Source of the DNA: Chlorokybus atmophyticus
Lineage: Eukaryota; Plantae; Mesostigma and Chlorokybus algae
DNA: 64,000 bases
Reading direction: 5' to 3'
Assembly: GCA_009103225.1 (NCBI GenBank)
Contig: RHPI01002272.1
Span: 13,451 to 77,450 of the forward strand
The notes below the pieces were generated by a model, which was not told where the DNA came from, did no database searches, and saw only the letters and a program-made list of their open reading frames with translations. The position numbers and the translations under genes were made by a program. Positions 30,545 through 54,949 of the stretch are shown in pieces (position 1 is the stretch's first letter; every line of letters begins with the position of its first letter).

Positions 30545-31345
30545 TCTGTGTTCATCAGCTACTGTCAGAAGGACAAGTCACATGCGCAACCTGACGTGCG
30601 AAACCTAGCGGACAGATTACAAGCCGATGGATTGCTGTGTCTTTGTGGACTACATGAATGACGGGACAGTGTCGTGGCCTGTCTTTGTCGGACAGATGCT
30701 GGAGGACAGACCAATGCGCGCACGTTGTTTAGTTGCACCATTGGCCAGCCCCGTGTGACCGCAATTGCATGCATGGTGTGTGGTGTACTTAAGTTGCTGA
30801 GATGCTGGGTTCAGGTCGTTGTTGCCTGTGACGAGCACTACAAATTTGATTCCCTCAAAGAGCCAGTCTTAGACAGCATCGACTTGCTGGGCAGGGGTAC
30901 TCCTGACGAGTACACCAACATCCTTTACAAGGTGTATGAGCAACAATATTGAACGGGCTGGCTGGTGCCAGTAAACTTTATGCCTCCTGGTGAGATAAGC
31001 CACGTCCCCAGCCAGATTGTCAAGTTCAGTTACTATTCCATCAATTGGCAGATTAAGGTGAGAGACAGGGTTTCCACTGTGACTGAGCTTGCTGGCTGAC
31101 TAAAGAGTACCTATCAGACGGCTCTAGTTGACCTGCCGATCAGCTCCCCTTGATGCTACGCATCAGCATGTGTGTGCTTACGCTGTATGTTCAAGTAGTT
31201 ATGAGCAGTACTTGATCAACACGCTTGCAGAACCCTGCTGACCAAAGGTACGACGACTTGCTGAAGCGCTTGCATAGTATCTCACCGTTTGTGACAGCAG
31301 CTGGAGCTACTGCCACGGGGCGCCGCCAGCTAGCACTGCTCTAAA
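30545..31345 (+). pseudogene. SEFIR (TIR-superfamily) domain, copy 1, three exons
   Basis: SVFISYCQKDKSH..VRNLADRLQADG..VFVDY..SWPVFVGQM | VVVACDEHY..GRGTPDEYTNILYKVYEQ..WLVPVNF..HVPSQI (exon 30815-31057) | NPADQRYDDLLKRL (from 31231). One frameshift and one TGA (30950). Confidence 0.75.
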
Positions 31346-31396
31346 CGACAGGTGATGGTTGTTACAGGCCTAAATGACAAAAAGAAGGTCGACGGA

Positions 31397-32248
31397 TGCA
31401 GCTGCTGATGGGATGGCAAGTGCTCGATCAGGCTTGTGTTTTGGTCCTTCACGTCGCAGTCAATGCACTGGCAGCAAGTGCGTAGCACCAGTACCAGTGC
31501 GTTCCTTGGAGTAACTGCTGATTGCTATGCACGAGTCGCCGATCTTCAGCAGCAGCTATCGCCAGCTCCTCGTCACAGGCGTACTTGTCAGTCAGAGAGT
31601 TGTTTGAAAACGAGGACATTCTCATCATCAATCTGTGGAGGGAGAGAGCTCAACCTGCAATGGACAGGCTTGTTGAGTTTTAAAACTCTTGCTCAGATTT
31701 CTACAGCAAATGTGCTCTCACCAATTGTGCTCTTACCAACAAGATGGCAGCCCTGAAGCGAAGCTCCTGCAGCTTATAAAAAACGCGCGCAGGTATGCGC
31801 CTATTGCGTTGCTTATAGCTACCTTGCCAGAGCACACACCCAGTGCGCACATCCACGTTTGCACAGCCTCTTTGTCGCCTATGACCGCCCCTTCACTTCC
31901 ATTGTGTACATGCAGGGTGGTCTATGACTTTTGGTACAAGGCATGAAATTGGTACACGACCAGGCTGCTGCCTGTGGATTTCTTAGCATCCGCAAGCATT
32001 GGGTTGGCAGAGGAAACGATTACAGACTGCTTGTGGAACCCATTGATATTGCAAATTATTACCGCCTGAAGCTGTGCGAGCAGTGGCGCGAAGGCAATCG
32101 TCATTACCTGGAGGCGAACAACCGTCCAGTTCAATACGTGTTTCTGGAACTTCGGTACGAGAAGTACAACCCAGGTAGCGTTGCACCCTCGTCAACGGAC
32201 CATGCGCTTCATGAAGCAGACGCGGTTGAGGCCAGCGCGCAGCTGTAG
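31397..32248 (+). pseudogene. EDS1/PAD4-type EP domain, copy 1, no lipase domain seen
   Basis: PAMDRLVEF*NSCSDFYSK, then NAR|RVVYDFWYK..HWVGRGNDYRLLVEPIDIANYYRLK..GNRHYLEANNRPVQY. GT-AG intron 31793-31915; stops and frameshifts present. Confidence 0.8.
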
Positions 32249-32354: not shown

Positions 32355-35300
32355 TTACAAGGCGGATGGTAATGTACATACAGGACGGTATGCAGTAGAT
32401 GGTTGAAAAGCCAACAGAGGCTTAGCGCACTGCAATACTAGTGCAAACACCAGAAAACATTGCAGTTGCAGGGCTTGATGCAAAACAAAGTCATGCGCCA
32501 ACATGTCCACCATACCATTGTTGACAAGTATGATGTTGCTGGCTTCATGTATAACACATGTGTTCCAAGTTAGTGTGGACCCCAACTGTGTGCAAGTTTT
32601 TTGCGTCAACATGTCTACCTTATCACTGATATTGGAAGGCCTAAGCGCTTTGAGGCATGTAAGGCAGGCAGTGCAGGATGAATTACCCCATCTTTCCTGG
32701 GCGGCACAGCTGCCTGCGGATGAGGCAAACATGGTTCAAGCTTGTGCCTAGCAGCTTTGACAAACACCTGTCCAACTTTCTTAACACAATGTCGGGTTGT
32801 CCATTGGCGGCTTCAAACAGTAGCGTCTTGCACTGCCCTCTTGTTGACGACCTTGACTACGCTCTTCCTTGGCATGGAGTCCTTGGAAGGACTTCCGAGA
32901 TCAGCGTGTACAAGCCCCCCGCAACAACATGCCACTGCATCCTCATTGAACGATTGAGCATGATTGATTCTGTGTGACGCTGCAGCTGCAATCTCATACT
33001 GCAAAAGCACTAAAGCAGGGTATATAAAGCGCTTTCACTGTGTACAATGTGTGACAATGGCTGCAGCCATGAGAGCAACAATTGCCGTGCACGCAATACC
33101 GTACGGTAAGCATATGCATATCTGCAAGCTACAACTGCTTTCTCTGCACACTGGTATATATGTCAAGCTTGCTCAACTGAACTGCCAAGCCAACTGAAAA
33201 ATTTTCTGGAATTGGTGGAGGTGCACTAATGGACTTGACTAGTAGCTGAACTTTTCGGCAGGGCTTGTGGTCAGCTATGTAGAGGATTTCAGTAGGAGTA
33301 AAGCGCCCTGAGAATTTTCGATCTGTTTGGACATCAAGTGCAAACCACTCAGAGTTGCTATCTTCGTTTGCATTTGCATTCATAGATCCCCTCAACTCCC
33401 TGCATCAAACAAGCTAGGCTCAATTGTGTCACCTTCACCAAGCTCAGGCATACAATGCTTGGCCAACAACGTCTCAACCCACCAGCATGCAGGGTCGCGA
33501 TCGGGGCAGTCGTTCGCGCTGGTTACGCAGTAAGCTTCAACAACGTGCTCTTGGTCGTCCTTAAAAGTGTATGACAGCCAGCTACCTGTGTTGAAAGCAA
33601 ACTGGTCAAGACAATAAGAGCATAATGAAACGCGTGCAGCATTGTGTATGAACTTGAACTTATTGCTCTTGTCTGCACACGCATCACGTCAGCCACGTCA
33701 ACATGTGAGCTTGTCACTCACTCCAAGCCTCTCCAGTTCTGAAGGCAAGCCATTTGGTCTGGACATGGCCATCAAATGCGCAAATACCCAACTCATGCGG
33801 ACGCCTTTCACCCGAGCACTTCACCCACCCACCAGCTATGCGTGGGCCGAGCATTGCCAGCTGCTTCCAATGCTTGGCGCTGCCAACTTGTGTTGCTGTT
33901 TCTTCTACAATATCGAGCAAGCCTGGATGCACGTCTATAAGCCCTTATACACGTCACCCCGTCACATTAGTCATATGCATGCGCCAGCAATCACCGTTGA
34001 GTTCTTGCTTGTCGAGGATACCCTGGAAGACGTCAAGCCCTTCAACAAGGACCGTCAACGCGTCCACCGGTAAGGGCTTATGCTGCAACTGCTGCCGGCA
34101 AACTCTCACTTTCTCCTGCAATTCTTCAAGCCAGGTGCTAAGGGCCGCATCTGTGGTGTAGCGCCGAAGCTGCTTGTGCATTGCGTTCATAATGCAACTT
34201 GCGGCTTCATCGCAAGCCGGAAGTCTATCTGCTCAAGCCAGCAAAGGGTCAGCACCATCCCTGGTGCCATTGATGAGAGCAAATACAAAAGAGGCAAAGA
34301 ACAGTGACAACAGATGAGAGAAAATGATGCTGTTCCTACCTTTAGATTTCGCCATCTGGAACATTGTGGCAACTCGCCTGAAGTTGGTACTTGCTTCGCG
34401 CTCCAACTGCGCTTCCAGCTGGTGCCACACAAGCTTTTTGCAATTGCGAATATGTTCAGGCACCTTGAGTAAGTTATTCCCCCAAATCCGTAACTCCTCC
34501 AAATGTTGCAACGACAGCTCGGGTAGGTTGTTAAGCTTATTGGAATCCAACACCAGTTTCTTCAACTGTTGCAAGCGATTGACTTCTTGAGGTACCTCGA
34601 CCAGATCATTTTGTGACACATCCAGCACTTCAAGGTGATGCAGTTCCCACAGCTCATTGGCTGGCAATGATGCCAAACGAGTGTTGCACAGAATTAAATA
34701 GCGGAGGTCCTTCATCTTGCACACCTGTCAGGAAGCTGATGAGCGGCGCAGCATGGGAAGGAGGAAGGGGGCATATGCCCCCTATGCACTGATGCAGGAA
34801 AGATGCGCATTTACGACCAGCTGTTGCTCGTATGCCCCGACCTGCAGTATTGTTCATAGTACATTGCCAGCATTGCACGCCCCTCACCTGCTGTAACAAG
34901 CCTTCTGGGTTACAATCGACATCTATTGAGCGCCAATGCTTGAGCTTCGGGAGCTCCAAATTGGGAATGGCACGCAATTTGCTGCAGAAGTCCAAACTAA
35001 GGAAAAGCAGATGTGGCAGCTTTAAACAAACTACTGTGGGTGCTGTGAGGGATGTCAAGGAGACGCAATAAGCGAGATCCAACATCTGCAGCAGGCATGA
35101 GATCAGTGGCATACTTGCATGCATGCAGATGCGGGCAGTGAGAGAGCTGCACCTGCAGATTTGTAAACTTATTGATGTCCGGCAGGATGACAAGTCTACC
35201 GCAACGTGTCAACACCAGCGTTTGCAGTGAGGGCAGCTGCAGACAAAAAGAACCAGGACAGGGTGTAATTGAAGCTCTGCCAAGCACGAATAAGAATATT

Positions 35301-37180
35301 TCATTCCGTTTTGCAACTCACTTGGATATTTGCCTCTGCATCCCAGAGCTGCTCAAAACTGCCAAGGGACAAATCCAAAGCATAAAGTTTGTTGTATACT
35401 GCTGCTTCGATCACTTGCACGTTGCGCAGCATGTTCACTTGTAAGGATACCAAGTGCTGTGCACTGCCTTGTAGAACCAAGTATGAAGCACAGTTCACAG
35501 CCAGTAGCCGCAGGCCTGGCCCGAATTCATCTGGTGCAACCCGCTCACGATTGAGTTCGACCTGTATCTCCGAAAATTCGCCCTGCAGTTGACACTCAGC
35601 CTGTCTCAGTACTCTGGCCAATCTGAGGCCTTGACAACTTTCACAATCTCACTATGCTGTGCATGGCGCAATGCACTGTGACAGCAACACGGCGGTAAGC
35701 GACAGGAGCGCCTAGTCTGGACACATACAAAGTAATGTGCGGCACACCTGCTGAGGGATTCCGCTGACATGATGCAACGTCGAAGGTTGGAGACATGAAA
35801 GCTGTTGCGGGGCTACCGTCTTTTTCAATTGCGTTCCTAGAATCACTAGCAAATCATGCATCACCAACAATCTACCAGCTATCTCTGGGTGTTCTTCCAC
35901 ACTTATAAGGGAGCTCTCTTGGAGGTTGAGTAGCACACGAGGAATTCCCCTTCGAAGGTCTGCAAGATCTCCAGGGCTGGTCCAGATGTACACTCCAGCT
36001 CGATACCCGCTATAAGTGCGTAGAAACGGATAGCACGCCAGGTCTTGAAATGCATCACGTTCCTTGCTTCCAAGGCGGGTCAAGCTGAACTCAAGGATGC
36101 TGAATATGCCATCTTCCTTCTCACCATGTAAACTTTGCATTTCTGGTAGCCGCTCCAGATAGTGAAGAAACTCAACACGACTTTGATTACGCAGCGCACT
36201 TCCAATCACCTGAAGTGCCAGTGGCAGTCCACCGCACGCCTCCACAATGGATTTAACGACAGGTGCACATACTCGGAAGGACTGCCCGCGCTCACCTGCA
36301 GCGCATACGTGCTCATGCAGCTCGTTACAAAGGAAATAATCACTCAGGTTGAACTCGTCCGTACAAGCGTTGTAAATAATGCCAGCAAACTCGTCTTGTT
36401 CCTTGCGAGTGTGCTGCCGGTATGCATGTCTGCAGAACAGGGTGATAGCATCTAGTGGCCCTAAACACGACACTTGCAGAATTTCCACATTCCCCGGGTA
36501 CTCCAGCCACCTGCGCTCCCAGGAAGTGAGAATCACCTTGCTGCCTGCAGCCACGGGCACCAGCAAATAGTCCGCTTGCTCCTTGGTAGTGACATTATCC
36601 ACGACAAGCAGGACTTGCTCGTTTCTAAGGCGTTCTGTAAGTAACTGTCGTCCATCGCTCAAGTCGAGCCCAACATTGTCATCGGCAGGGGTCTTACAGA
36701 GGGCCCTCAGCATGGCTCGCTGCTGTTCCTTCAGTGCCACGGTGCTCTCTCCTGGATCAAGTGTGATGAAGCAGCTTCTTCCGCAATAGTCTGCGACAAA
36801 GTAATTGTACACATGCTTGGCTATGGTAGTTTTGCCCACACCTCGCATGCCAAGCAGTCCCACCACCGTGTGCGTTTCCAAACGCTTTATAACAGGTGCA
36901 GAGCGTGCATGGATGTCAACAGCCTCAACTGTAGCCACGGGCTTATGATGTATGCTCAGCTTTTGGCAAACCCAATGGACGACTTGTGTGGTGAGTTCCA
37001 CTTCATTCCTGCACATGCAACGATACCAGCAGATCACAAAACTGGAAGGATGCGAGATTTTGGGCACAGACATTGTTCGTACAACACAACAAACAGTACG
37101 CTGGCATACAGCAGTCCGATTCTAGCACCCAAAGCGTCAACTAGATGCCGCCAGCTCAGCAGCAAGCAACACAGACACAG

Positions 37181-37263
<83 letters not shown>

Positions 37264-38060
37264 CACTTGAACTCATTGCTTCTGATGCCTGGTATATCGA
37301 AAAGCTTTGCCATAGCCTGTAGCCAGTTTTTTCTTGTCTCCTCGTGCACCTGTTGCCCTTCTTCTATGGGTTGCTGTTTGATCAAGTCGAACTGCTGCTT
37401 CTGCAACTTTTCAAACCCGGTGAGTGGGGGGGTGGGGAGGGGGGTGGGGAGGGGGTGGGGTGGTTGTTCCTCGCTCCAGTAGAACACAGGTACGATGTTT
37501 TTGCTTTCGTTAATCGCTTTCACCAGCTCTGTTAGGCAGTCTATCGACTCCGAAAATCGCTGGGAGAGAATGACAACGACAACCTGTGCAGCGCTCAAGG
37601 CGTCCAACATACTTTGCTGCGCACTTGGGCTCCCTTTCAGATCATTGTCATCAAGAAAGGGTTTGATAGAGTAGTTGGTGCGTTTCAACGCCTCATAGAT
37701 ATACGAGGCGAATGTTCTCTTGGTGTCGGGTCCTCGATGGCATATGAACACATTCCACTGCACACACTCAGTCAGTGCTGAACAATACACAATGCGGTTG
37801 TCACACACACACACACGCGCAGGCGCAGGCGCACATATAAATGTATATAAGTGTATATGCATATAATGGAGCATTGGGTTCCTGTGTGACGAGCAATTTG
37901 AGACTGGTCGCGTCAGCGACACCATGTGACGCAAAGAGATACCCACACAATGCCCAATCACATGAGGAAGTCTCAGGGAGCTTACTGCGGGTGCCGGGTC
38001 TTTGAGATTGTCAATGCTACAACCTTCAGCAAGTGTACTGAGAGATCCCAATGAAGTCAT
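32355..38060 (-). CDS. TIR-NB-ARC-LRR (TNL) immune receptor 1 with extended C-terminal exons; some lesions likely, 3' boundary approximate
   Basis: TIR VFICHRGPDTKRTF..SIDCLTEL (37267-37777). NB-ARC P-loop GMRGVGKTT, LLVVDNV, GLPLAL, MHDLL (35712-37008). LRR exons about 33950-35620. Confidence 0.9.
37187..37260. repeat. (GA)n microsatellite in the TIR/NB-ARC intron
   Basis: Directly visible, next to the GTGAGT donor (minus strand) at 37261-37266. Confidence 0.95.
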
Positions 38061-39099
38061 GACTGCGGGCAAGCGGGCTAAACAGAGAACGACGTGGTAC
38101 TGTCCTCAGTGTGCCCGCACTGCTGCTTCACAAATCAACCCTGCGATTAGTTCGTGAAGAGGCGAGTGCCGAGATGAACTTCAATTACCCTCACATGCGA
38201 TATGGGCGGATATACAAGGCATCTATTAGTGGTCAACTTTTATGTCTGGCCGGCTGCATGCATGCAAGATATGCGATCAGCGATATGCACGTGTGCAAGG
38301 CGTCTGTTAGTGGGCGTCGATTCATGTCTGGCCGTCTGCATGCATGCATGCTCGCAGTGTACTCTGAATCAAAGAACGGATGTGACCGCATCCGCATAGT
38401 CATCGTGTATGCGCATTGAGCTAAGGCAGGTAGGGTCAGAGAAGCTGTGCCAAAGGCAGTGGCCAGTCACAAGGTCACTGTGCATTCTGGCATGGCAAGT
38501 ACGTACAGCTGCTAGGCGACGACCTCACGCCCGCCGCTGCCTGCCCACAGCAGCGAGGAGTGAGCCTCGCTGAGGTGCAAGAGCGACTCTGGACTGGCGG
38601 AAGAAGCAATCGCAAGCAGCGCTGCCAATCCGCTGGGCGTGGGGCGCAAGGAGGCCGGCACCGGCGGCCGCAACACCGGCAGCAGAGGCAATATCCGCCA
38701 ATCCTGGTCGGGGCAGTGGCCAGCGCGGCACAATATCTGATGCCATTTGGCTACACGTTCTGGGCTCCTGAGGTTCCTCTGACCCTTTTCCTCTGCGGTC
38801 GTACCACCATTCCAAACCACCTAGGTGTTCCTCTCGCACCGCCGACAAACTGCGAAGGGCACGTTTCAGGCCTGAAACGTGCCCTCCGCATTTGGTCGCG
38901 GTGTGAGAGGAACCGCTGGCGGTGGCGGCGGGGGCGGGCAATGTGGAGGGCGAGGGCGCGGGCACAAGACTAGCACAACATGCACCCAACACTGGCAGCC
39001 ATCTTCGCCCTGCAGCTCGCTTGCCTCTACTGCTTCCAGCAAGCAGAGTCAGTGATTGCATGTGCCCGGTGCGGGTCTCTCGTCTGCGACTCTCGCTAG

Positions 39100-41910: not shown

Positions 41911-42597
41911 GCCGTCGAGTGTGCATACCTCTGTGTTTATCAGCTATTGTCAGACGGATCCAGAGCATAGAACGCGAGTGAGGCAGCTAGGAAGCAAGTT
42001 GCGAGACGGACGGTATCACGGTCATCGTTGACTACAAGCATGACGAATCATTGTCATGGCCTGATTTCATCATACAAATGGTGGCACCAGGGGTGAAGGT
42101 GGGCATGCACTATACATGTGCTCAACTCTGTTACTTGATTGAATGAGCAACACCCGTGATCGTCGGGTTTGCAGGTCATTGTTGCTTGTGATGAGCATTA
42201 TGCGAGACACTGTCAAGGCCAGCGACCGCCCGGGGTGGGCCCCACATTACCACTCCCCTCATCACCAGGTGAGGGGAGCGGTATTGGCGTTCGCATTGAG
42301 ATGAACCTTATTTCCAACAAGCTGTACGAGCAACCAAACAATGCTCGTTGGCTAGTGCCAGTGCTGTTCGTACCGCCTGGCAGAAGAAAGCACGTGCCAA
42401 GGCAAATTGCAATGTACGATCACGTCATCATAAAGTGGCAAGAGCAGGTCAGACGGAAGCACTGTTTGGGTGCTGCTTGTAAGGTGCTGATGTGACGCCA
42501 CTAATTTTTGACCCGCGCACCCGCTCATCAACTCTTACAATTTCAGGAGCTTGATGGGCAAGGTTAAAATCAATTATTGCGACGCTTTTCAGCCTAA
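41911..42597 (+). pseudogene. SEFIR domain, copy 2, three exons
   Basis: SVFISYCQTDPEHRTRVRQLGSKLR-DGITVIVDY..SWPDFIIQM (41911-42098) | VIVACDEHY..GIGVRIEMNLISNKLYEQPNNARWLVPVLF..HVPRQI (42175-42447) | ELDGQG*NQLLRRF. Intron positions match copy 1. Confidence 0.8.
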
Positions 42598-42919: not shown

Positions 42920-42959
<40 letters not shown>

Positions 42960-43558
42960 NGGGTCTGTGCATAATAGCGCACCAGGAAGTACACGCCGGG
43001 TGACTCATGATACTGCAAAAGCAGAGCTAAAAGCAAGACAAATAGCAGATGCTCACCTTGCCAAATGCAGTGTATGCGTGCCTACCAACACGTGGTGCAT
43101 CAAGTAAGTTCATGCATCTTTGAAGTTGTGCCGCACAACTTCAAAGATGCATGAAAAGGAAGGGCAGCACTTGCACCTGCTGTGCACCTGCTCACCAAGT
43201 TACTGCGGGCTGCAATATGCTTCATGCATGGACCTGTCGTCAAGGCATGACATGACATATCCACGGCCATCATTGTCACGATTATCAAGCTGTAACATAT
43301 GCACACCAATCTATTGACTCATCACTTTAACTGCAACGTTTGCCCACCCTCGTTGACACAGCGCACAAATGGCATACCGGTCGCATGCCAATGACCGTCA
43401 TGCCATGCACACATATCCGGCTAGACCATATGCATACACACCAGCGAATGTTGTGCAGATGTATACAAACAACTACATATTGCAACCGTCTGCAGACAAA
43501 GCCTGCTATGTCGCCGCGCCAATTGACAAGTGTGAGGTGGGCAAGGTTCCGAAAGATG

Positions 43559-44260
43559 CTAACTACCTAAACGCCTCACCCACCTTAACAGCTTGCGAAG
43601 TGACGTTAGTGACTCCGCTTTATCATTGGAGAGCTGATGAGCCCGCTGCCTGAGGATATGATTGGGCTCCCGGGCCTCTCTCACCCCAGCAGTGACGAGC
43701 TCCTGCAATGCGTTGTTGATTGAGCTCTCTTGCCTCTCGGGGTACGCATTGCGGTATGCCTGCTCCAGCAGGTAATAACGCCGCGGCCGCACAACAGCCT
43801 CAGCAACCGAGAGACGAAGGTAATGCTTGCCGGTGGAGGCATAAAAATTCGCACCCTTTGGAGAATACCAGTTGGCAATGTCAATGGGCTCCACCAGCAA
43901 CCGATAGTTGTTGCCTCTTGCGAGCCAGTCGCTTGTGGAAGAAAGAATGTCCTCTGGGATGGAACCGCGCTCGTACTGCGTGGTAACCCAATCCCAAAAA
44001 TTCTTAAGTTTTACCCGAGCTTTCTCAATCTGCGGTGGCCGGTTCTATTTGAAGCCAACATAGTAGTCTTGTTCGTCCTGGTACTGCTTGATAACATCCA
44101 TCGCGTCATCAACACCATCGTACTTCATAGACAGCTCTGCTGCCTGCCTGTTTCGAGCATCTTCCCTGTTGCGCACAAAAGCATACAGTCCAAACAGGAA
44201 CCCGAGCAAGCCGACCAGACAGGCGAGGATGCTGGGCCAGGGAGGCGCTGGTTCAGCCAT
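43559..44260 (-). CDS. Transmembrane-anchored stand-alone EP-domain protein, copy 2 (intronless, one internal TAG at 44045-44047)
   Basis: MAEPAPPWPSILACLVGLLGFLFGLYAFV (TM)..DAMDVIKQYQDEQDYYVGFK*NRPPQIEKARVKLKNFWDWVTTQYERGSIPEDILSSTSDWLARGNNYRLLVEPIDIANWY..GKHYL..RPRRY. Confidence 0.85.
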
Positions 44261-47200
44261 CTGTTGGGTTGTAATAAGCCCCACGCGTGCATGCGCTCTT
44301 GCTCTTGCTCCTTCCCCTTTGTACAGCGGACTCGGGCACTGCGCATGCACGTGTTGATGTTCAGTTCACTGTTCAATTGATCCCCATTGCTTAGAGCGGA
44401 CATGTTGCAACACCCCGCAGCAGTGCAAACGCTCCTGCAACCAAAATTGATTGCAGACTTACTCAACGTGTGTAAGCTAAGCTGCCCCAAACCAAGCACC
44501 AGCCCAGCCAAGCTGTGGTGACTCGGACTGGCACGACTCAGTTCAGCTGGCGAGCATGATGGCAGCAACTGCTTACGGACATGTTTACAGCATGGCTAAC
44601 GGGAGCGCTCGCATTAAGCAACAGCAACAACATTACAAGTTTAAAAGCCAACTACTTGCTACAGCGGCCAGGGTGGAGCAAGAAACGCAAGCAGTACAGT
44701 GCTACGCCGGTATATGTGCATGCATGTAAGCCAGCGTGAGCAAGCTGTTGCACTGGTCGATACATAAACAGGCAGCACTGATGGCGTCTTGCACCTTCTA
44801 GCTAGCAAGCTAAACCAACCTCTCACCAGGTTTGAGCTTCAGGCTTCCTTGCTCCAGCAGCAACCTCTGGAGTTGAAGCCAACAGCTTCAGAGCAAGGAC
44901 AGCGCCTCCTTGCTGACCCAGCCAGCCAGCAACCTCGTCGGGCTACCGCAGCGCCCCTTCCTACAGGCGCAAGTTGCCCATACCCTTACCCCTTCAGCGC
45001 AACGGCAGCGTCGCCGCCCGTCGCCCCCTCCTCCCTCCCGCCCACAGCGTCAACAAGCTGGCTCAACTTAACGCGAGCATTCCATTTATGAGGGGTAGGA
45101 GAAAGTCTTGCGGCCAGCACTTGACTTCGTCTCATCGGCTGCATGCGACTTGAAACATGTCTCCGGGTCCAAAAGAACGAGATACCGGTAGGTTACAGAA
45201 TAGTGTCGTCTTCTGACAAAGTCTTTGTTACAACTTGCAGTATGGGCTCTGGTGTTTGGGTTTCAATGAGCGAGATGTTAAGACGCTATGCGACAGAGGA
45301 GACCTGAATGCCCGTGCACTATGTGCTAGAGATTGGCGGCGGAGTGGGTGGGGCGGAGCTGAGCCGTCATGCAGGCCGCTCTACCTACTGCTGGAGATAA
45401 GTGGTGCAAGCCGCTGACGGTTGGAGCAACTACGCCCTCCTCCCCGCCAGCCGGCTGCGCAGTGCAAAAGCTAGCGTTGGCTGCAAACACGGTGCGCTAT
45501 ACCTTCTGCTGTTGAGTAGGCTGCGCGTGTTTGCTGCTGTCGCACAACAAGTCTGCTTGGGCAGGGCAATCAGAAGTTACGTAGTACTCGAATAACGTGC
45601 TTTGCAATGGATAGCCAGCTGCAGCCAGTGTAGCAAGCTGGTTGCAGCTAGTTGCAACAATCAAGTAGGGTTGTTTGTGGTTCAGAAATATTGTCACTGA
45701 GCCGTGCTCCTGCAGACAAGGTTCTAAAAGTCATCGATGATCAATTCTTGTGACGCAGCGAGGTGTCTGCAGGTACGAGTGGCTTGACAATTGAAGATAG
45801 CAGTATCTGAAGGTAGGCATTGACGCGCCAAGTAGTAGTGATTAGTCCTCGTGATATAAATTCTGCACGACGCTGTCATGCCACTGCTTGCATTTCAGAC
45901 ACGTTGCTGACAACATAACAGCAGCCAGCTCGTTGCTGTCATGTTCTCCATCAGTCAAATCAATCCTGCGTTCCGCGGCCAGCATGCATGTTTGCGTGCA
46001 TTTTATGCTGCGTACGGGTATCTGCAACACGTCCTATTGCAGGTGAGTGGTAGGTGTTGGCAAGCAACTGCCTCGCATCTGCCACTACCTGCTCAACCAG
46101 TAATTTTTGCAAGAGCTTTGATCCACAAAACTGTGTCTGGACTCAAACACAGATTTGAAAAATCAGTTGTAAGCAGCCCCCCACTCCCAAGTAGCTGCCC
46201 TTGTGAATGCCGTGCTTGTAGTGGTGTATCTGACCCTGCTGAAGGTTAAGCCCTTTTGTCGTTGATATCACCTTGTGGATGTGTGGCTGCATCGGCTTCG
46301 TGGCTCTCGTGCGTGCGTGCGTGCGTGCGTGGAAACTGCAATTGTATGTGTGTCTGTGTGCGTGTGTGCGCGTGCGCGCATGAGCGCATGCGCGGACACA
46401 CGTGCGCGTCATGGTACATGCATGTAAACTACACAACAAGCGGGCACATCGCAGGGGTCGCCTTCCACCATTGCATCATCACTTGTCGTAGCCATTGTGT
46501 GACCAAGTACATGTACTAATGGCTTGATGTTAGCTATGGATGCACAACAGATCAGCAGCACTGCTACCAGTTGTACCAATCGCGCTGAAGTACAACTTAC
46601 ATCAGAGTGCAGAGGCTTTCTAACTGTTGTAATCATCACTTGCTGGGTCGTTGTTAAGCATGCACATTGTCATGGTAGACTAGTGATAGCACACAATCTG
46701 GTAAGCGTTCCATGAACACATCTACAAACCATCAGTCAACTGTACAGTCAACCACCTGCAGTAGTCATAGTCAACTTATACAGCACATTGCCATTAAAGC
46801 TAGTGTGAAATGATGATGCAATGGTTGCTATACTTGTGAGTTATAAACATACTTGGCTGACAACCACTCCAAGTGCACTTGCACACATGAGTCATGTGTC
46901 CACGTATGTGTCGAAACAGTTGTCTGCGAGTCAATTGTTACTGGTTGCCATTGAGACAGGTATTGTCTGCATGTGTAGCATGTGCAAGTTTACAGGCAAT
47001 AAGCAGCAATAACGTCTACATGTCACAATGCGGTGCTGGCTAAAGTAGAGTGACAATGCCGCAACAGCATAGCGACAACCGCAACGACCGAATCACACAT
47101 TCAGCCAGCCGTCTACCCACCTCAACACTCTTGTCACCAGCATTGCCACCATGTACCTGGGCTGCGCGGACCCGTGGCCCACCCGCACGACCACGCTCGC

Positions 47201-50049: not shown

Positions 50050-53000
50050 GCATGGAAGGCGCCTATCGCTCCTGTCTGTCTCAAAGGGCGTTCACCTCGT
50101 CGTACATGCCCTGCCTTTAAAGCGCCAGTGCCGGGTTGTCAGAAGAAGCTGTCGCCTTGTAGAGGCCAACGAGCCTAAGCTTTGCTTTGGAACTCGCCAG
50201 CACCCGTCGATGCAGGGCTGTGGCCTTGCCGAAGTCGTGATTTTGATCAATAGCAACTGCTATGCAATTGTCAAAAGCGTAGCCAACATGATGAGCCTTG
50301 GCGACGCTGCAAGATGTGCTCGCATCTGCGCAAATTGCTCTGCTCCTTGCAGCGTGGGAAGGCTACACAGCCCTCGACCACCCATTGGTGACCAAGAGAT
50401 GCGACTGCCATTGTAGTCAGAGCACCAAGCCCTGCCACCGGTGGTGTACCCAGCGATTGGGTGGGTCGCCTGACAAATAGCCAACACAGTCAGTACACCA
50501 GCAGCAGGTGCTTAACACCATAACCATCGCGTGCAGTGTCAGCAACATGTGTGTAGGTCGGTGTCTTAAAGTGGGTGTGCGTGTGTTGAGTGTCGTTTGC
50601 GAATCTGGATGTGCATGCAGATGTTTCAGTCAGCATGCATACTAGTATGTGTAAGTCGACCTACCAGAGTGGCTGCGTGCGTGAGCGCGTGTCAGCTTGT
50701 GTTGGAGAAGGTGTGTGCGCATGCGCGTGCTTGCATTGGTCGACGTACGCGTGTGCATACGGTGCCTGTGCCAGGCATAAAGCACAGTGTCCAGTCAGTC
50801 TGTAAGACTCGTTGCAGTACGCATATGTATGAACATGAGTAACTGTGCACAATGTGTGTACGCCACTTTGAGCAGCTGTGCGAAACGAGCATGTGTGTGT
50901 GGCCGCTCTTACCCTGGTACGGTGAGGGGCAACCATACCCTGCATTGCCTCACCCTCCTACATACCATTGCGCACATACCAGTGAGACAACATAAGGATT
51001 CTGGCAAAGCTGCCAAACCGCTGTACTGTAATTGCTTCCGTCCTGCTCCTGCAGCGCTGCGATTGCACTGGTAGATCAGTATAAAGCTGACGTTGAAGCA
51101 GACTTACTTCTCTCCTCCTCCTCTTCCGCCGCCTCCCGCTGGTGCTGCTGCAGCACAGCCACAACAACAGGAGCCAACCTACTGACAAATTACGGCAGCG
51201 ACGCCAAGTTGTTGCACCCGGGTTAGGTACGTATATTGCAGAGCAGCGAGGTTGCCAAAGGATTCCGGCAGCAATGCCAAGCTGACGCACCTGGTTAGGT
51301 CCACCCTTGCAGCGCAGCGAGGTTGCCGAAGGACTCCGGCAGCGATGCCAAGCGGTTGCAAGCGTTCAGGTCCAGCTCTTGCAGAGCAGCGAGCTTGCCG
51401 AAGGACTCCGGCAGCGACGCCAAGTTGTAGCACCACCTCAGGTCCAACTTTTTCAGAGCAGCGAGGTTGCCGAAGGACGCCGGCAGCGACGCCAAGTTGT
51501 CGCACCGACTCAGGTCCAACTTTTTCAGAGCAGCGAGGTTGCCGAAGGACGCCAGCAGCGACGCCAAGCTGTCGCACTCGCTCAGGTCCAGCTCTTGCAG
51601 AGCAGCGAGGTTGCCGAAGGACGCCGGCAGCGACGCCAAGCTGTCGCACTCGCTCAGGTCCAGCTCTTGCAGAGCAGCGAGGTTGCCGAAGGACGCCGGC
51701 AGCGACGCCAAGCTGTAGCACTCGCTCAGGTCCAGCTCTTGCAGAGCAGCGAGGTTGCCGAAGGACTCCGGCAGCGACGCCAAGCTGTGGTGGCACTCGC
51801 TCAGGTCCAACTTTTGCAGAGCAGCGAGGTTGCCGAAGGACTCCGGCAGCGACGCCAAGCTGTCGCAACACCTCAGGTGCAACTTTTGCAGAGCAGCGAG
51901 GTTGCCGAAGGACTCCGGCAGCCATGCCAAGTCGTAGCACCTGTTTAGGTTCAGATTTTGCAGAGCAGCGAGTTTGCCGAAGGACTCCCGTAGCGACGCC
52001 AAGCTCTGGCACTCGGCTAGGTGCAGCTCTTGCAGCTTAGCGAGTTTGCCGAAGGACTCCGGCAATGCCGCCAAGCTCTGGCACTCGGCTAGGTGCAGCT
52101 CTTGCAGCTTAGCGAGTTTGCCGAAGGACTCCGGCAATGCCGCCAAGCTTCTGCACCCACTCAGGTCCAGCGCTTGCAGCTCAGCAAGTTCACCAAAGGA
52201 TTCCGGCAGCGCCGCCAAGCTCGTGCACTGGCGCACGTCCAGCGTTTGCAGCTCAGCGAGTTTGCTGACAGACTCGGGGAGCATGCTCAAACGCCATGCA
52301 GTGAGATGCAGAGCCTGTAGCCTAGTAAGCTCGCCAAGCACAGGCACCTCCATTAGACGGTTCTGTCTGCGATTGCCAGTGGGGTAGACCCGCAGCTCCA
52401 GGACTTGCAGCTCCTTGAGGTTTCTTAAGAACTCAGTCCGCAGCCTTGTGACATTGAACTGTCTGGTGTTGATTACATGTACGATGAGGACGACCAATGT
52501 TGTGTGTGCAGCGGCATTGCATAAGAAATTGTTCAAGGCTGAACAGCTCGCACTTTTCCACTCCAGATATACCAGGTCTTTCAGAACCCACTTGGTCACG
52601 CAGAATGCTTTTTTAATTGAATGCACGAAAGAGTCGCACGCAGTAGTTGCACGCAAGAGTCGCACGCAGCAGCCTTCTTTCTTCCTTGTTTTTCTTTGTT
52701 GTTGGCACGCAAGAGTGTGAGTGTAAACTTCGCCATCCCAATCAATCGTACCAAGGTCCAGCATGCGGAGGCGAGGCATGAAGGCCATGCCTCGTAATGG
52801 TGGGCTGCTGTTGACACCAGTCCAGGACATAGTCTCGGCGTTGTCAAAGCCCTGCATGCAACAACAACAACCCAATGATCAGCAATACCCACGTGTTCAC
52901 TCCACCAGCATGTTGTAACACAATCCTAGAACGTCGTGAATTGCAAGTTCTCATCGGATGCATGCATGCAGCAATCCTTGACAGGCCAGTAGAAAGGGAC

Positions 53001-54949
53001 ATGAGGTGAAGGAACCAAGATGGAACGTGGGCATTGCAAGCACCTTCATGGATATGGCGCTCAATGCCTTTGGCGACCAGATGTGCCTGGGCGGGTTGGC
53101 ACAATCGGCAATCATTCGCCCCATGTCGCGAAGTTGGTCATGCACTGAAAGGATTGTAGCTTTGCCATAAGCCACAGTCCTATAACCACGCCGCTGCCAA
53201 GGTCCAATAGTGTGAATAGTGCGAATATCATCCTCCGGGTCTCCACTTAAGCGAACGAGGGACCACTCCACCAGGCAATTCAACGCATCTGACCCGCCCC
53301 ACGCTGGAAGCAGCATGTCCTTGCTCTTCCCCAATGCAAAGCAGCAGATATCCAAAAACACTTGCTGCGTCTCGGGTTGTAGATAGTCGTAGCTGAGCTT
53401 GAGCTTGTCCCAGAGCTTGTTGTCAGCTGTACCTGCCACTGCGGTTGCCTGCTGCAGTCGCCACAGTGCGTCTTTCCAAGCCTGCACATCACCCTTTCTG
53501 CGCGTGTGGAGAAAGGAGCCCACGACCTCCAGTGCAAGCGGCAGGCCCTCACACGCCTCGATGATATCTTCAACAATGGTCTTCAGATCTGCAGGCACTA
53601 CTTGCGATCTGAAGGCATGTTGACAGAACAGTTCTCTAGGGTACTGACCATTGAGTGGACCAACATCCTCCACCAACGTATGCTTCTCATGCCCCTTGAT
53701 TAAGTTGCAACTACGAGAGGTCACCAGCACACGACTGCCGGTACCAAGCAGAGGGCTGGCGTCGTCTAAACCGAAAGGACCAAGCAGGGCTGCTTCTTGA
53801 TCGTTACTCCAAATGTCATCAACAACGAGCAGCACCTTCTGCCCTTGCAAGCGTGCCTTGAGAGTTGCCTTTCCTTCAGCAATGGAGTTGAATTTATAAC
53901 TAGAGTTGGGACCACTCCCAAGCTGTTCAAGCATCTGCTGTTGCAGCTGTACCAGCCTCCCATTGTTTTGGCATGGTTCGTTTCCGACCTCTAGAAAGCA
54001 GCAGCTGCCAGCAAATGTGCTGCGCAGTTTATTGTAGATTGCCATTGCCAGCGTAGTCTTCCCAATGCCACCCATGCCCCATAGCCCTAGTAAGACGACC
54101 TTGCTTCCTCTGGTAGCAGCACTCAACTTCTCGAGTACAGCTTTAACGCGGCGATCGATGTCCACCGGGTTTGCGGCAACATCCAAAGGTGGGCGGTCCA
54201 ACGTTTCCAGCACGTCGTCCACCACTTTCTTGGCTAAACAAACCGGGTCACTGACAAACAATAGCAACCATCAGGAAACCACACATGACAACCTTAGTGG
54301 AGATGTTTCCCAGTGACACCTTACCCATTCTCAAGCCTCAGGCCCGTTTTTCCAAATGCTTTTGCGAGCGCATCACGGTATGCAGACTCATTCTGGATAT
54401 ATCGCTGCTGGCCACTCAGGCATGCGCTGAAAGCACAAAACGTGTTTGTAACCAGGAACGCAGCTGCCTGACTGACAAGTGACAGAGTGTAGGAAAGAAT
54501 GCTCACCTGCGTATACTTTGCTGAATTGTGACTTGTAGGCTGTCAAAGTCGTCATCGAAGAAGATGGGCTTGACGATGTTGGTTGGATTCTCCATCATGA
54601 TGCGCAGCTCTTCCAGGCAGTACCAGGAGTCCCCGTAGTTACGTGACAGAACAGGCATTCTGATGCAAGCGGACTGTACATTTTGGGTGATCACAGTCCA
54701 GGCTTCGTCCCCGGGCTGCAAGCTGAGCTCATCCACAAAGCAGGTCAAGTTCACTTGCTTCAGAAGGTGACTTAGAAAGTAAACGAAGTTCTTCTTGACG
54801 TCCCCTCTATGGCTCAAGAAAATGTCACTGCCAGGGCGAGGGATGGTCTTCGACGGAGTCCATTTGCCTGTGATGTCAACGTGTAAGTTGGTTGTCAGTG
54901 GACTCAAGGTGACTGTAGACAATGGCACTTGATGAATTGAAATCTGCAA
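50050..54949 (-). CDS. TIR-NB-ARC-LRR (TNL) immune receptor 2; last LRRs and post-LRR exons disrupted
   Basis: TIR DIFLSHRGDVKKNFV..SWYCLEEL (54503-54949). NB-ARC GMGGIGKTT, LLVVDDIW, VLVTSR, GLPLAL, VHDQLRDMGR (52951-54267). LRR ORF 51295-52875. Frameshifts and a TAA near 51190-51300. Confidence 0.95.
51240..52260 (-). repeat. About 14 tandem 72-bp (24-aa) LRR units, central ones nearly identical in DNA
   Basis: Unit LASLPESFGNLAALQELDLSECxS; DNA unit gccgaaggac.ccggcagcgacgccaagctg..gcactcgctcaggtccagctcttgcagagcagcgaggtt. Confidence 0.95.

What the first reader, a model, noticed from the sequence alone, without database searches (positions are those of the whole stretch)
43559..44260. Stand-alone, membrane-anchored EP-domain protein without a lipase domain
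Seen: a 233-codon intronless frame with one TAG. An N-terminal hydrophobic helix (ILACLVGLLGFLFGLYAFV) followed by basic residues leads straight into an EP core: QY..EQDYYVGFK ~ WYK..GYYDSFK; RVKLKNFWD ~ R..LA.FWD; W...G..YRLLVEPIDIANWY ~ W......Y..LVEPLDIA.YY; GKHY..RPRRY ~ G.Y...GR..RY. Established: known EP domains are soluble and C-terminal to a lipase-like domain. Inference: a new TM-EP architecture showing that EP can be a mobile, independent module; lack of introns suggests retrocopy or horizontal origin.
Basis: partly seen in the sequence, partly recalled or inferred. Interest (0 to 1): 0.85.

Follow-up and report, generated by a model that had tools for sequence, protein, structure and literature searches.

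The report
Stop-broken algal membrane-anchored EP-domain gene
An early-branching green alga (Chlorokybus) transcribes a small gene for one membrane helix plus a short "EP" domain, the sensor half of the seed-plant immune hub EDS1, with no lipase half; this copy is cut by a real stop codon while an intact sister copy is expressed beside it.

Summary
A minus-strand frame (44260..43559) of 233 codons has one in-frame TAG (44047-44045). It encodes an N-terminal membrane helix followed by a genuine short EP domain: Pfam EDS1_EP 50.8 bits (cutoff 23.1), family profile vs EDS1 E=1.6e-31, and a confident AlphaFold model whose 22 best PDB matches are all EDS1/PAD4/SAG101.

RNA contigs show a spliced, polyadenylated mRNA. 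Its upstream exon is non-coding, so no lipase exon joins. The TAG is present in RNA of three runs. A second, Lys-encoding form is co-expressed; it is the annotated Chlorokybus gene Chrsp114S01653. This copy is therefore most likely a recently silenced paralogue.

"Intronless, retrocopy or horizontal origin" is not supported: a 488-nt 5'UTR intron is shared by both copies. The architecture is also not unique. TM-EP is a family in Chlorokybus and in environmental eukaryotic contigs, and shorter EP proteins occur in trebouxiophyte algae. Four independent loci have TIR genes within 10 kb.

The scan had already found sister TM-EP genes on other DNA of this same genome.

In passing: an EDS1-type lipase-like part lies upstream of a short EP, collinear with seed-plant EDS1, in Elliptochloris bilobata and two metagenomic contigs.

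The parts
44827..45031 (-). Exon 1, non-coding 5'UTR (the 5' end is approximate)
   Evidence: RNA contigs join 44827 to 44338 (table 5). X4 record 28 reaches 45031, and an adapter loose end lies at 45013. The main frame has two stops in this exon, the last one 4 codons before the junction.
44339..44826 (-). 5'UTR intron, 488 nt, GT..AG on the minus strand
   Evidence: Joint 44338/44827 has depth 429.9 in X1 and also appears in X4. The donor GTGAGA and acceptor CAG were read. The paralogous form shows the equivalent joint (44338/44820).
44261..44338 (-). 5'UTR part of exon 2; holds an out-of-frame upstream ATG (44292) opening a 55-codon overlapping uORF
44048..44260 (-). Coding piece 1 (71 aa): short N-terminal tail, TM helix (residues 11-29 = 44174-44230), basic stretch, stalk helix ending in the YY..FK motif
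   Evidence: 96% identical to P0001; hydropathy and flanking charges; one long helix 8-61 in the model of the intact sister
44045..44047 (-). Premature TAG at codon 72, in the loop just before the conserved EP core; the sister gene has AAG (Lys) here
   Evidence: RNA contigs identical to the window across 43952-44099 occur in X1, X2 and X4. A second form with 44047 A>T is also present.
43562..44044 (-). Coding piece 2 (161 aa): short EP domain (conserved core about 43754-44032) plus a variable C-terminal tail
   Evidence: Pfam EDS1_EP E=2.1e-13; PDB PAD4 1.5e-7, EDS1, SAG101; 87% identical to P0001
43559..43561 (-). Terminal stop codon (TAG)
43326..43558 (-). 3'UTR; poly(A) addition at 43326
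   Evidence: X1 contig 43326-43769 carries a 21-T loose end before 43326 that is not in the genome.
41930..42432 (+). Neighbour: SEFIR-type domain remnant, convergent with the TM-EP gene
   Evidence: tblastn with P0008 and P0005. No Pfam hit on the 108-aa ORF alone.
34654..38072 (-). Neighbour: TIR-NB-ARC-LRR gene 1 (TIR 37263-38072, NB-ARC 35712-37073, LRR about 34918-35272)
51295..54826 (-). Neighbour: TIR-NB-ARC-LRR gene 2 (LRR 51295-52875, NB-ARC 52951-54267, TIR 54515-54826)
30545..32245 (+). Neighbour: SEFIR-EP gene copy, the second EP domain in the window
   Evidence: tblastn with P0008, P0005, P0006 and P0009, and with seed-plant EP domains

Best explanation
This is a real, transcribed member of a Chlorokybus gene family encoding small single-pass membrane proteins. 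Each has a 4-10-residue outer tail, one TM helix, a basic stretch, a stalk helix and a cytosol-facing short EP domain, equivalent to about the first 55-60% of the EDS1/PAD4/SAG101 EP domain, with no lipase-like domain. This copy is the closest paralogue of the annotated gene Chrsp114S01653 (P0001). It carries a genuine nonsense codon at position 72, immediately before the EP core. As read, it can make only a 71-residue helix peptide, so it is most likely a recently silenced, still-expressed paralogue. Because the stop lies in the last exon, the mRNA may escape junction-dependent decay, which would fit its abundance (inference). For the family, the inferred mechanism is this: the EP domain, held at a membrane, reads or relays nucleotide signals made by the TIR/SEFIR proteins that these genes are fused to or clustered with. 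That would be a lipase-less, membrane-bound counterpart of EDS1-type signal perception. Shown: gene structure, expression, the stop, EP homology and fold, the anchor, the family and the TIR neighbourhood. Inferred: membrane topology, ligand sensing and loss of function.
For: Gene structure and expression: spliced joint 44338/44827, a poly(A) tail at 43326, and RNA contigs in three runs from two studies. The upstream exon is non-coding. TAG: contigs identical to the window across the TAG in X1, X2 and X4. Sister gene: the second expressed form differs at exactly the residues of P0001, including *72K. Among the listed differences, 11 codons are synonymous and 12 are not, roughly dN/dS 0.3-0.4, so constraint acted over most of the divergence. 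EP homology: Pfam 50.8 bits; family profile vs EDS1 1.6e-31, PAD4 5.5e-28, SAG101 2.5e-15, covering AtEDS1 367-503. Fold: AF2 pLDDT 85.5, pTM 0.77; the top 22 PDB hits are all EDS1/PAD4/SAG101, TMq up to 0.57; seed-plant EDS1-family models lead in AFDB. Anchor: KD 2.5 helix; the C-flank is more positive in 19 of 21 TM-EP proteins. Family. TIR link: fusions in P0005, P0008 and P0009; two TNL genes and SEFIR copies in the window; TIR genes within 10 kb at L002/L003, L005 and L007. In seed plants, TIR-made nucleotides bind between the two EP domains (10.1101/2022.05.02.490369; PMC12856790).
Against: The EDS1 cavity residues are only partly kept. The R493 equivalent is Arg here but in only 18 of 36 family members. 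The K440 equivalent is Glu here, and the His476 position is not conserved. The near-invariant residues (W, EP, D, A, Y, RP) look structural. The C-terminal about 40% of the seed-plant EP domain is missing. Three of seven independent short-EP loci have no TIR gene within 10 kb. No DNA contig covered the TAG: run X3 had no contig over 43850-44536, so confirmation rests on RNA contigs. Contig depths are poor measures of expression. Nothing here tests ligand binding, localisation or translation.
Confidence: 0.7

Rival explanations
1. The TAG copy is still functional. Either the stop is read through to give the full TM-EP protein, or the 71-residue helix-plus-stalk peptide acts on its own, for example by pairing with intact TM-EP paralogues as a regulator or decoy.
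For: The mRNA is as abundant as that of the intact sister in three RNA runs. The part after the stop still shows the family's pattern of a conserved core and a variable tail. The 71-aa piece is 96% identical to the sister.
Against: The codon after the stop (TAG AAC CGG) is not one of the read-through contexts known to me (own knowledge). There is no ATG in the downstream piece for re-initiation. A recent nonsense mutation would leave the same conservation pattern. A last-exon stop explains the mRNA abundance without any function.
Confidence: 0.12
2. The hydrophobic segment is a cleaved signal peptide or a type II anchor, so the EP domain is secreted or lumenal rather than cytosolic.
For: The segment is N-terminal and preceded by only 8-10 residues.
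Against: The hydrophobic run is about 21 residues, long for a signal peptide (own knowledge). It is followed at once by a basic cluster, and the C-flank is more positive in 19 of 21 family members. The model continues it as one long helix into the stalk. All known EP partners and TIR products are cytosolic (literature cited above).
Confidence: 0.08
3. The TAG is an assembly or sequencing error, or a variant of one strain or culture only, and the gene is intact in the organism.
For: The one DNA run laid (X3) has no contig over the TAG. Logan contigs drop rare variants.
Against: Contigs with zero differences from the window across 43952-44099, TAG included, occur in three RNA runs from two studies (2013 and 2021). 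They sit alongside a clearly distinct second form, 10 differences in 148 nt.
Confidence: 0.05
4. The gene is a retrocopy or a horizontally acquired module, as the first reader inferred from the lack of introns.
For: The coding frame has no intron.
Against: There is a spliced 488-nt 5'UTR intron, shared with the paralogue, and no genomic poly(A) tract. The copy is nested in a Chlorokybus clade of TM-EP paralogues (96/90 support). Relatives occur in other green algae. No confirmed relative was found in prokaryotic or viral collections.
Confidence: 0.04

Closest known systems
EP domain of seed-plant EDS1, PAD4 and SAG101 (Pfam PF18117)
   Same: Clear sequence homology (Pfam above cutoff; profile E=1.6e-31 to EDS1) and the same helical fold. 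The core motifs FW, W..RG..YR.LVEP.DIANYY, HY and RP.RY are shared. It is associated with TIR-domain genes.
   Different: It has no lipase-like domain and an N-terminal membrane helix instead. Only about the first 55-60% of the EP domain is present (AtEDS1 about 367-503). The cavity residues are partly replaced. It falls on the non-seed-plant side of a 100/100 branch.
Chlorokybus atmophyticus gene model Chrsp114S01653 (P0001, JGI Chlat1 / EukProt EP00898)
   Same: It is the sister copy: 96% identity before the stop and 87% after it, with the same TM-EP layout and the same 5'UTR intron. Both are expressed.
   Different: P0001 has Lys (AAG) where this copy has TAG. Its annotated first 30 residues lie in what the RNA shows to be intron or 5'UTR, so its true start is probably Met31 (inference).
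Other Chlorokybus EP proteins (P0002-P0009): TM-EP, TM-EP-TIR-EP, SEFIR-EP, LRR-SEFIR-EP
   Same: They share the same short EP module. P0002-P0004 and P0007 share the TM-EP layout.
   Different: They are 22-45% identical. Some are fused to TIR/SEFIR or to NLR parts.
Type II Thoeris ThsA of bacteria (membrane helices plus a Macro sensor domain that reads a TIR-made signal). Analogy from my own knowledge, not tested.
   Same: The proposed logic is the same: a small membrane-anchored sensor encoded next to TIR enzymes.
   Different: The sensor fold is unrelated. PADLOC gave no match. No evidence of membrane disruption by TM-EP.
Bacterial DUF4760 (PF15956) small membrane proteins
   Same: N-terminal TM helix followed by a helical domain of similar size. 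The pointers are weak: Pfam E=0.03, ESM Atlas feature score 0.92, Foldseek probability 0.97 and 0.72.
   Different: Below the Pfam cutoff and seen in only 1 of 36 members. TM-scores of 0.32-0.41 are under the same-fold range. The EP core motif is absent from 185,579 prokaryotic species genomes.

Membership tests
EDS1 family (EDS1/PAD4/SAG101) | N-terminal lipase-like alpha/beta-hydrolase domain | tested here: not met
   No Lipase_3 hit. The upstream exon is non-coding. Ten seed-plant EDS1-family proteins hit the window only with their EP parts.
EDS1 family (EDS1/PAD4/SAG101) | EP domain recognised by Pfam PF18117 above its curated cutoff | tested here: met
   50.8 bits vs 23.1 for the piece after the TAG; 55.6 bits for the intact sister.
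EDS1 family (EDS1/PAD4/SAG101) | Full-length EP domain (about 211 profile positions, including the C-terminal helices) | tested here: not met
   Only profile positions 31-99 (this copy) or about 5-124 (family) match. The profile alignment ends near AtEDS1 503 of 623.
EDS1 family (EDS1/PAD4/SAG101) | EP helical-bundle fold | tested here: met
   AF2 pLDDT 85.5. The top 22 PDB matches are all EDS1/PAD4/SAG101, probability 0.90-1.0, TMq 0.38-0.57. This was tested on the intact sister, not on this copy.
EDS1 family (EDS1/PAD4/SAG101) | Positively charged cavity residues (EDS1 K440/K441, K478, R493; PMC6377607) and His476 | tested here: inconclusive
   The R493 equivalent is Arg here, but in only 18 of 36 members. 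The K440 equivalent is Glu here (Lys in 11 of 36). The K441 equivalent is Arg here. The 476-478 loop is not alignable with confidence.
EDS1 family (EDS1/PAD4/SAG101) | Heterodimer formation driven by the lipase-like domains (LLIF helix) | not testable with these tools
   There is no lipase-like domain, so that interface cannot exist. EP-EP pairing could not be modelled here.
EDS1 family (EDS1/PAD4/SAG101) | Placement inside the seed-plant EP clade | tested here: not met
   The seed-plant-type cores form one side of a 100/100 branch and this copy lies on the other. The 'seed-plant' label was inferred from similarity to full lipase-EP proteins, not from taxonomy.
Algal short TM-EP family | Single N-terminal TM helix followed by a basic flank | tested here: met
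Algal short TM-EP family | Short EP core with the family motifs, total length about 190-260 aa | tested here: met
   233 codons here
Algal short TM-EP family | Uninterrupted reading frame | tested here: not met
   TAG at codon 72, confirmed in RNA contigs
Algal short TM-EP family | Phylogenetic placement with TM-EP paralogues | tested here: met
   Sister to P0001 (100/100), within a clade with P0002-P0004 (96/90)
Processed retrocopy | No introns and a genomic poly(A) tract at the 3' end | tested here: not met
   A spliced 5'UTR intron is shared with the paralogue. The poly(A) is a loose end not encoded at 43300-43326.
DUF4760 (PF15956) | Pfam match above the curated cutoff, recurring across members | tested here: not met
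   14.8-14.9 bits vs cutoff 25; 1 of 36 members
DUF4760 (PF15956) | Shared fold | tested here: inconclusive
   Foldseek probability 0.97 and 0.72, but TM-scores of 0.32-0.41. The Atlas shape search gave nothing. hhalign was not possible because no DUF4760 sequences were available.

The most novel reading that the evidence does not exclude
TM-EP proteins are membrane-bound receptors or adaptors for TIR/SEFIR-made nucleotide signals in green algae. That would make them an older, lipase-less form of EDS1-type signal perception. EP would then be an ancient green-lineage module that was joined to different partners (membrane helix, SEFIR, TIR, NLR) and, already in chlorophyte algae, to an EDS1-type lipase-like domain. 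This locus would be a recently silenced member of that system.
Probability: 0.3. Interest if true: 0.85.

Novelty: new variant of a known kind. Interest (0 to 1): 0.58.

Why it matters
The EP domain is treated in the literature as the hallmark of the seed-plant EDS1 family (PMC10834447, PMC9806590). One recent preprint concedes only "short EP-like sequences" in green algae (10.64898/2026.05.20.726525). Yet TIR domains from non-seed lineages, Chlorokybus included, were tested in Nicotiana and most such TIR domains needed EDS1 to trigger cell death (same preprint). This raises the question of what reads TIR signals in organisms without EDS1. A robustly homologous, lipase-less, membrane-anchored EP family, fused to or clustered with TIR/SEFIR/NLR genes in an early-branching streptophyte alga, gives a concrete candidate that can be expressed and assayed. 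This particular copy adds two things. It shows the family turns over, being an expressed paralogue with a fresh nonsense codon. It also gives clean transcript evidence that no lipase exon is attached.

Tried and rejected
1. Lipase exon spliced in from upstream: rejected. Exon 1 has in-frame stops, and there is no lipase-like exon in the window.

2. Retrocopy: rejected, because of the shared 5'UTR intron and non-templated poly(A) tail.

3. A second TM-EP copy inside the window to explain the Lys form: none found, so the sister gene lies elsewhere.

4. Exact look-up of P0001's contig: not on record. A proper codon-level dN/dS was therefore impossible, and I used only the differences listed by read laying.

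5. Bacterial origin or the DUF4760 / abortive-infection lead: three weak pointers. Against it, the Pfam hit recurs in only 1 of 36 members, PADLOC is empty, the Atlas shape search is uninformative, and no EP-motif relative was confirmed in GTDB genomes or IMG/VR. It stays an untested lead.

6. The search for related loci with the broad alignment A1 failed for lack of a conserved stretch. It was repeated with A2.

7. Cavity-residue conservation as evidence for ligand binding: mixed, so not used as support.

8. MLKL_N-like region in the Myrmecia EP protein: below cutoff, kept only as a lead.

9. Literature search for a prior description of TM-EP or algal lipase-EP genes: nothing in the held library beyond the one sentence in the 2026 preprint. 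Its references 32, 53 and 54 could not be read.

Full report
**Observation**

The frame lies on the minus strand. It has ATG at 44260-44258, an in-frame TAG at 44047-44045 (codon 72) and a terminal TAG at 43561-43559, 233 codons in all. The first 71 residues contain a 19-21-residue hydrophobic helix (mean Kyte-Doolittle 2.51, residues 11-29) followed by RNREDARNR. The 161 residues after the TAG match Pfam EDS1_EP at E=2.1e-13, 50.8 bits against a curated cutoff of 23.1, and nothing else.

**Organism and sister gene**

The only close protein in 5.8 billion is P0001, a 258-aa model of Chlorokybus atmophyticus (JGI Chlat1, Chrsp114S01653) that already carries the Pfam EP label. It is 96% identical to the piece before the TAG and 87% to the piece after it. 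It has Lys where this copy has the stop.

**Transcript**

Contigs of three RNA runs from two studies (2013 and 2021), laid on 43000-47000, show these features:
- Coverage of 43326-44338.
- A 21-T loose end before 43326. This is a poly(A) tail on the minus-strand mRNA and is not encoded in the genome.
- A joint from 44338 to 44827 whose skipped ends are GT..AG on the minus strand.

The gene therefore has a 488-nt intron. The upstream exon (about 45031-44827) carries two stops in the main frame, the last one four codons before the junction. No in-frame ATG precedes 44260, so the exon is 5'UTR. Ten seed-plant EDS1-family proteins hit the window only with their EP parts.

**The TAG is real**

Contigs with zero differences from the window across 43952-44099, which includes the TAG, occur in X1, X2 and X4. 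Each sits beside a second form with 10 differences in 148 nt, one of which is 44047 A>T, giving AAG. Translating the listed differences reproduces exactly the residues of P0001: A40V, M45I, *72K, K80R, V83G, L106F, P134Q, T143N and so on. Both genes are therefore expressed in the same cultures. The window holds only one copy, so the sister lies elsewhere. The sister shows the equivalent splice joint (44338/44820), so the duplication copied the intron. That excludes retroposition.

Among the listed differences, 11 codons are synonymous and 12 are not. This is roughly dN/dS 0.3-0.4, so constraint acted over most of the divergence and the stop is probably recent.

Two caveats apply. The DNA run had no contig over the TAG. 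Contig depth is also a poor measure of expression.

**Homology and fold**

A 36-sequence family alignment (A1) gives a profile that matches rice EDS1 at 1.6e-31, PAD4 at 5.5e-28, Arabidopsis EDS1 at 6.9e-25 (residues 367-503) and SAG101 at 2.5e-15. The whole soluble part, starting just after the helix, is therefore homologous to about the first 55-60% of the seed-plant EP domain. The C-terminal part is absent; Pfam positions beyond about 124 of 211 never match.

AlphaFold2 on the intact sister with A1 gives pLDDT 85.5 and pTM 0.77, all helical, with one long helix (8-61) running from the membrane segment into a stalk. The top 22 Foldseek PDB matches are all EDS1, PAD4 or SAG101 (probability 0.90-1.0, TMq up to 0.57). 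The next fold, translin, has probability below 0.3. AFDB clusters give seed-plant EDS1-family models first.

**Cavity residues**

EDS1 K440/K441, K478 and R493 line the EP cavity (PMC6377607). TIR-made nucleotides bind between the two EP domains, with EDS1 His476 and R493 involved (10.1101/2022.05.02.490369; PMC12856790). Bridging through:
- The R493 equivalent is Arg in this copy, but in only 18 of 36 family members.
- The K440 equivalent is Glu here.
- The near-invariant Arg aligns to EDS1 R490.

Residue conservation neither supports nor excludes ligand binding.

**Anchor and topology**

In 19 of 21 TM-EP proteins the flank after the helix is more positive than the 4-15 residues before it. 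By the positive-inside rule, the EP domain should face the cytosol. This is inference.

**Family**

An exhaustive HMMER search of 1.84 billion representatives with P0001 found 107 proteins.

| Group | Members | Evidence |
|---|---|---|
| Chlorokybus TM-EP | P0001-P0004, P0007 | |
| Chlorokybus TM-EP-TIR-EP | P0005 | |
| Chlorokybus EP without a detected helix | P0006 | |
| Chlorokybus SEFIR-EP | P0008 | |
| Chlorokybus LRR-SEFIR-EP | P0009 | |
| Short EP proteins only 30-45% identical to seed-plant members | about 60 clusters | |
| Complete environmental TM-EP proteins, 186-313 aa, from JGI, ENA and Logan assemblies | about 12 clusters; 9 scanned, all above the Pfam cutoff | |

Named sources include the trebouxiophytes Elliptochloris bilobata and [Myrmecia] bisecta, and a record filed under Ascophyllum nodosum. 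Two of the contigs carry eukaryote-type neighbours: a split aaRS with WHEP-TRS (L004) and SART-1 (L006). A motif scan of 185,579 prokaryotic species genomes and of IMG/VR confirmed no relative.

In a maximum-likelihood tree of 86 EP cores, all seed-plant-type cores lie on one side of a 100/100 branch. This copy pairs with P0001 (100/100) inside a Chlorokybus TM-EP clade (96/90). Environmental TM-EP proteins are scattered over several clades. The root is unknown, and the seed-plant label was inferred from similarity to full lipase-EP proteins.

**Context**

In the window the gene sits between two TIR-NB-ARC-LRR genes (34654-38072 and 51295-54826, both minus strand). It lies next to a SEFIR remnant (41930-42432) and 11 kb from a SEFIR-EP copy. 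Elsewhere:
- One environmental contig carries TIR-NB-ARC, TM-EP, a 1019-aa TNL, a second EP and a TIR-only gene within about 30 kb.
- L005 has an EP ORF directly followed by a TIR ORF.
- L007 has a TIR gene 4 kb away.
- Three loci (L001, L004, L006) have none within 10 kb.

**Interpretation**

The locus is an expressed, recently silenced paralogue of a membrane-anchored short-EP family. For the family, the fusions and neighbourhoods, together with the only known role of EP domains, make a role in reading or relaying TIR/SEFIR signals at a membrane the most likely mechanism. This step is inferred, not shown.

The main rivals are:
- Residual function of this copy, through read-through or an active 71-aa peptide.
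- A secreted or lumenal EP domain.
- An erroneous TAG.
- A retrocopy or horizontal origin.

**Prior knowledge**

The held literature treats EP proteins as confined to seed plants (PMC10834447, PMC9806590). [quoted passage not shown] I found no description of the membrane anchor or of the TIR clustering.

The scan itself had already followed up sister genes on other pieces of this genome: intact TM-EP, TM-EP-TIR, a transposon-broken TM-EP and SEFIR-EP. My results were obtained independently and agree with them.

**In passing: a lipase-like part upstream of EP in green algae**

Ten seed-plant EDS1-family proteins align collinearly, in separate exon-like blocks, to one strand of three loci:
- L005 (ENA ERZ22854972)
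- L008 (ENA ERZ26867466)
- L009 (Elliptochloris bilobata JALJOU010000074.1)

In L005 the blocks are lipase-like parts at about residues 44-158, 137-180 and 263-327, followed by EP parts at about 415-505. The L005 lipase ORF keeps GHSLGG. Its 44-residue second exon hits only EDS1, PAD4 and SAG101 in the whole PDB, at 6e-9 to 5e-5. The EP exon is of the algal short type. L005 and L008 share conserved exon blocks separated by unconserved spacers. NCBI annotates two separate genes at the Elliptochloris locus, and no RNA evidence was examined, so a single lipase-EP transcript is not shown.

**Limits**

- Run and organism names were coded.
- Logan contigs show presence, not absence.
- The structure was predicted for the intact sister, not for this copy.
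- The organisms behind the metagenomic contigs are unknown.

Noticed in passing
L005:5088-8375 (minus); L008:5189-8504 (plus); L009:4804-8628 (plus; Elliptochloris bilobata JALJOU010000074.1): An EDS1-type lipase-like part (GHSLGG kept in L005) lies upstream of a short EP on the same strand. In all three loci the blocks are collinear with ten seed-plant EDS1-family proteins. One 44-aa exon hits only EDS1/PAD4/SAG101 in the PDB. This may be a lipase-EP (EDS1-like) gene in green algae. NCBI annotates two genes at the Elliptochloris locus, and no RNA evidence was checked.
   Followed up: partly
L003:165-17607 and L002:569-12514 (overlapping stretches of one region, on JGI contigs from metagenomes 3300060284 and 3300060285): An unknown organism carries TIR-NB-ARC (567 aa), TM-EP (P0111), a 1019-aa TIR-NB-ARC-LRR, a second EP gene (P0010) and a TIR-only gene within about 30 kb. 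This echoes the Chlorokybus cluster.
   Followed up: partly
L005:10001-11168 (plus): An EP ORF (P0015) is directly followed by a TIR_2 ORF, 44% identical to the TIR of Chlorokybus P0005. It is probably an EP-TIR fusion gene in a second organism. In the tree, P0015 groups with the first EP of P0005.
   Followed up: partly
P0022 ([Myrmecia] bisecta KAK9811796.1), residues 8-88: An EP protein whose N-terminal region gives a sub-threshold MLKL_N match (E=8e-4, 19.4 bits vs cutoff 27). If real, a membrane-executioner type domain would be fused to EP.
   Followed up: no
window 44128-44292 (minus): An out-of-frame upstream ATG at 44292, 32 nt before the main start, opens a 55-codon uORF that overlaps the start of the TM-EP frame. 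It could damp translation of both paralogues.
   Followed up: no
window 45327-45490 and 45772-46127 (plus): A divergently transcribed, spliced (GT..AG) RNA lies next to the TM-EP 5' end. Its longest ORF is 102 aa and was not searched against any family library. It may be a non-coding or unannotated transcript sharing the promoter region.
   Followed up: partly
P0001 residues 1-30 (equivalent to window 44261-44350): The public gene model's first 30 residues (starting MYRQ) correspond to sequence that RNA shows to be intron end plus 5'UTR. This copy has no ATG there. The true start of the sister protein is probably its Met31.
   Followed up: partly
P0001 and TM-EP family vs bacterial DUF4760 (PF15956): Three weak, independent pointers link TM-EP to bacterial DUF4760 and 'abortive infection' small membrane proteins: Pfam E=0.03, ESM Atlas feature score 0.92, and Foldseek AFDB probability 0.97 and 0.72 with TM-scores of 0.32-0.41. 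None reaches significance, and no profile-profile test was possible.
   Followed up: partly
AFDB cluster hits A0A1D3CUH7 (207 aa), C5KH53 (269 aa, 'Transmembrane protein'), A0A7S0DJB3 (233 aa): Small proteins with no family name (one labelled only 'Transmembrane protein') match the TM-EP model at Foldseek probability 0.97-1.0 (TM by hit 0.37-0.58). By their UniProt accession ranges they may be protist proteins (my reading, unchecked). The TM-plus-helical-bundle layout may reach beyond green algae.
   Followed up: no
P0033 (CAM9723916.1, filed under Ascophyllum nodosum), contig 462,671 bp: A short EP protein is deposited under a brown alga. It clusters tightly with environmental green-type short EPs, so it may come from an associated organism in that assembly.
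   Followed up: no
window 42925-42960: A run of about 35 C ends in a single N just downstream of the SEFIR remnant. It is likely an assembly-difficult homopolymer.
   Followed up: no
L001 (ENA ERZ19610909 ptg000166l, 678 kb): The contig carrying the divergent TM-EP P0068 also has NrdD, a MutS_V fragment, NUMOD4, RING and a LINE-type RT with endonuclease. It could be a eukaryote or a giant virus; this was not resolved.
   Followed up: no
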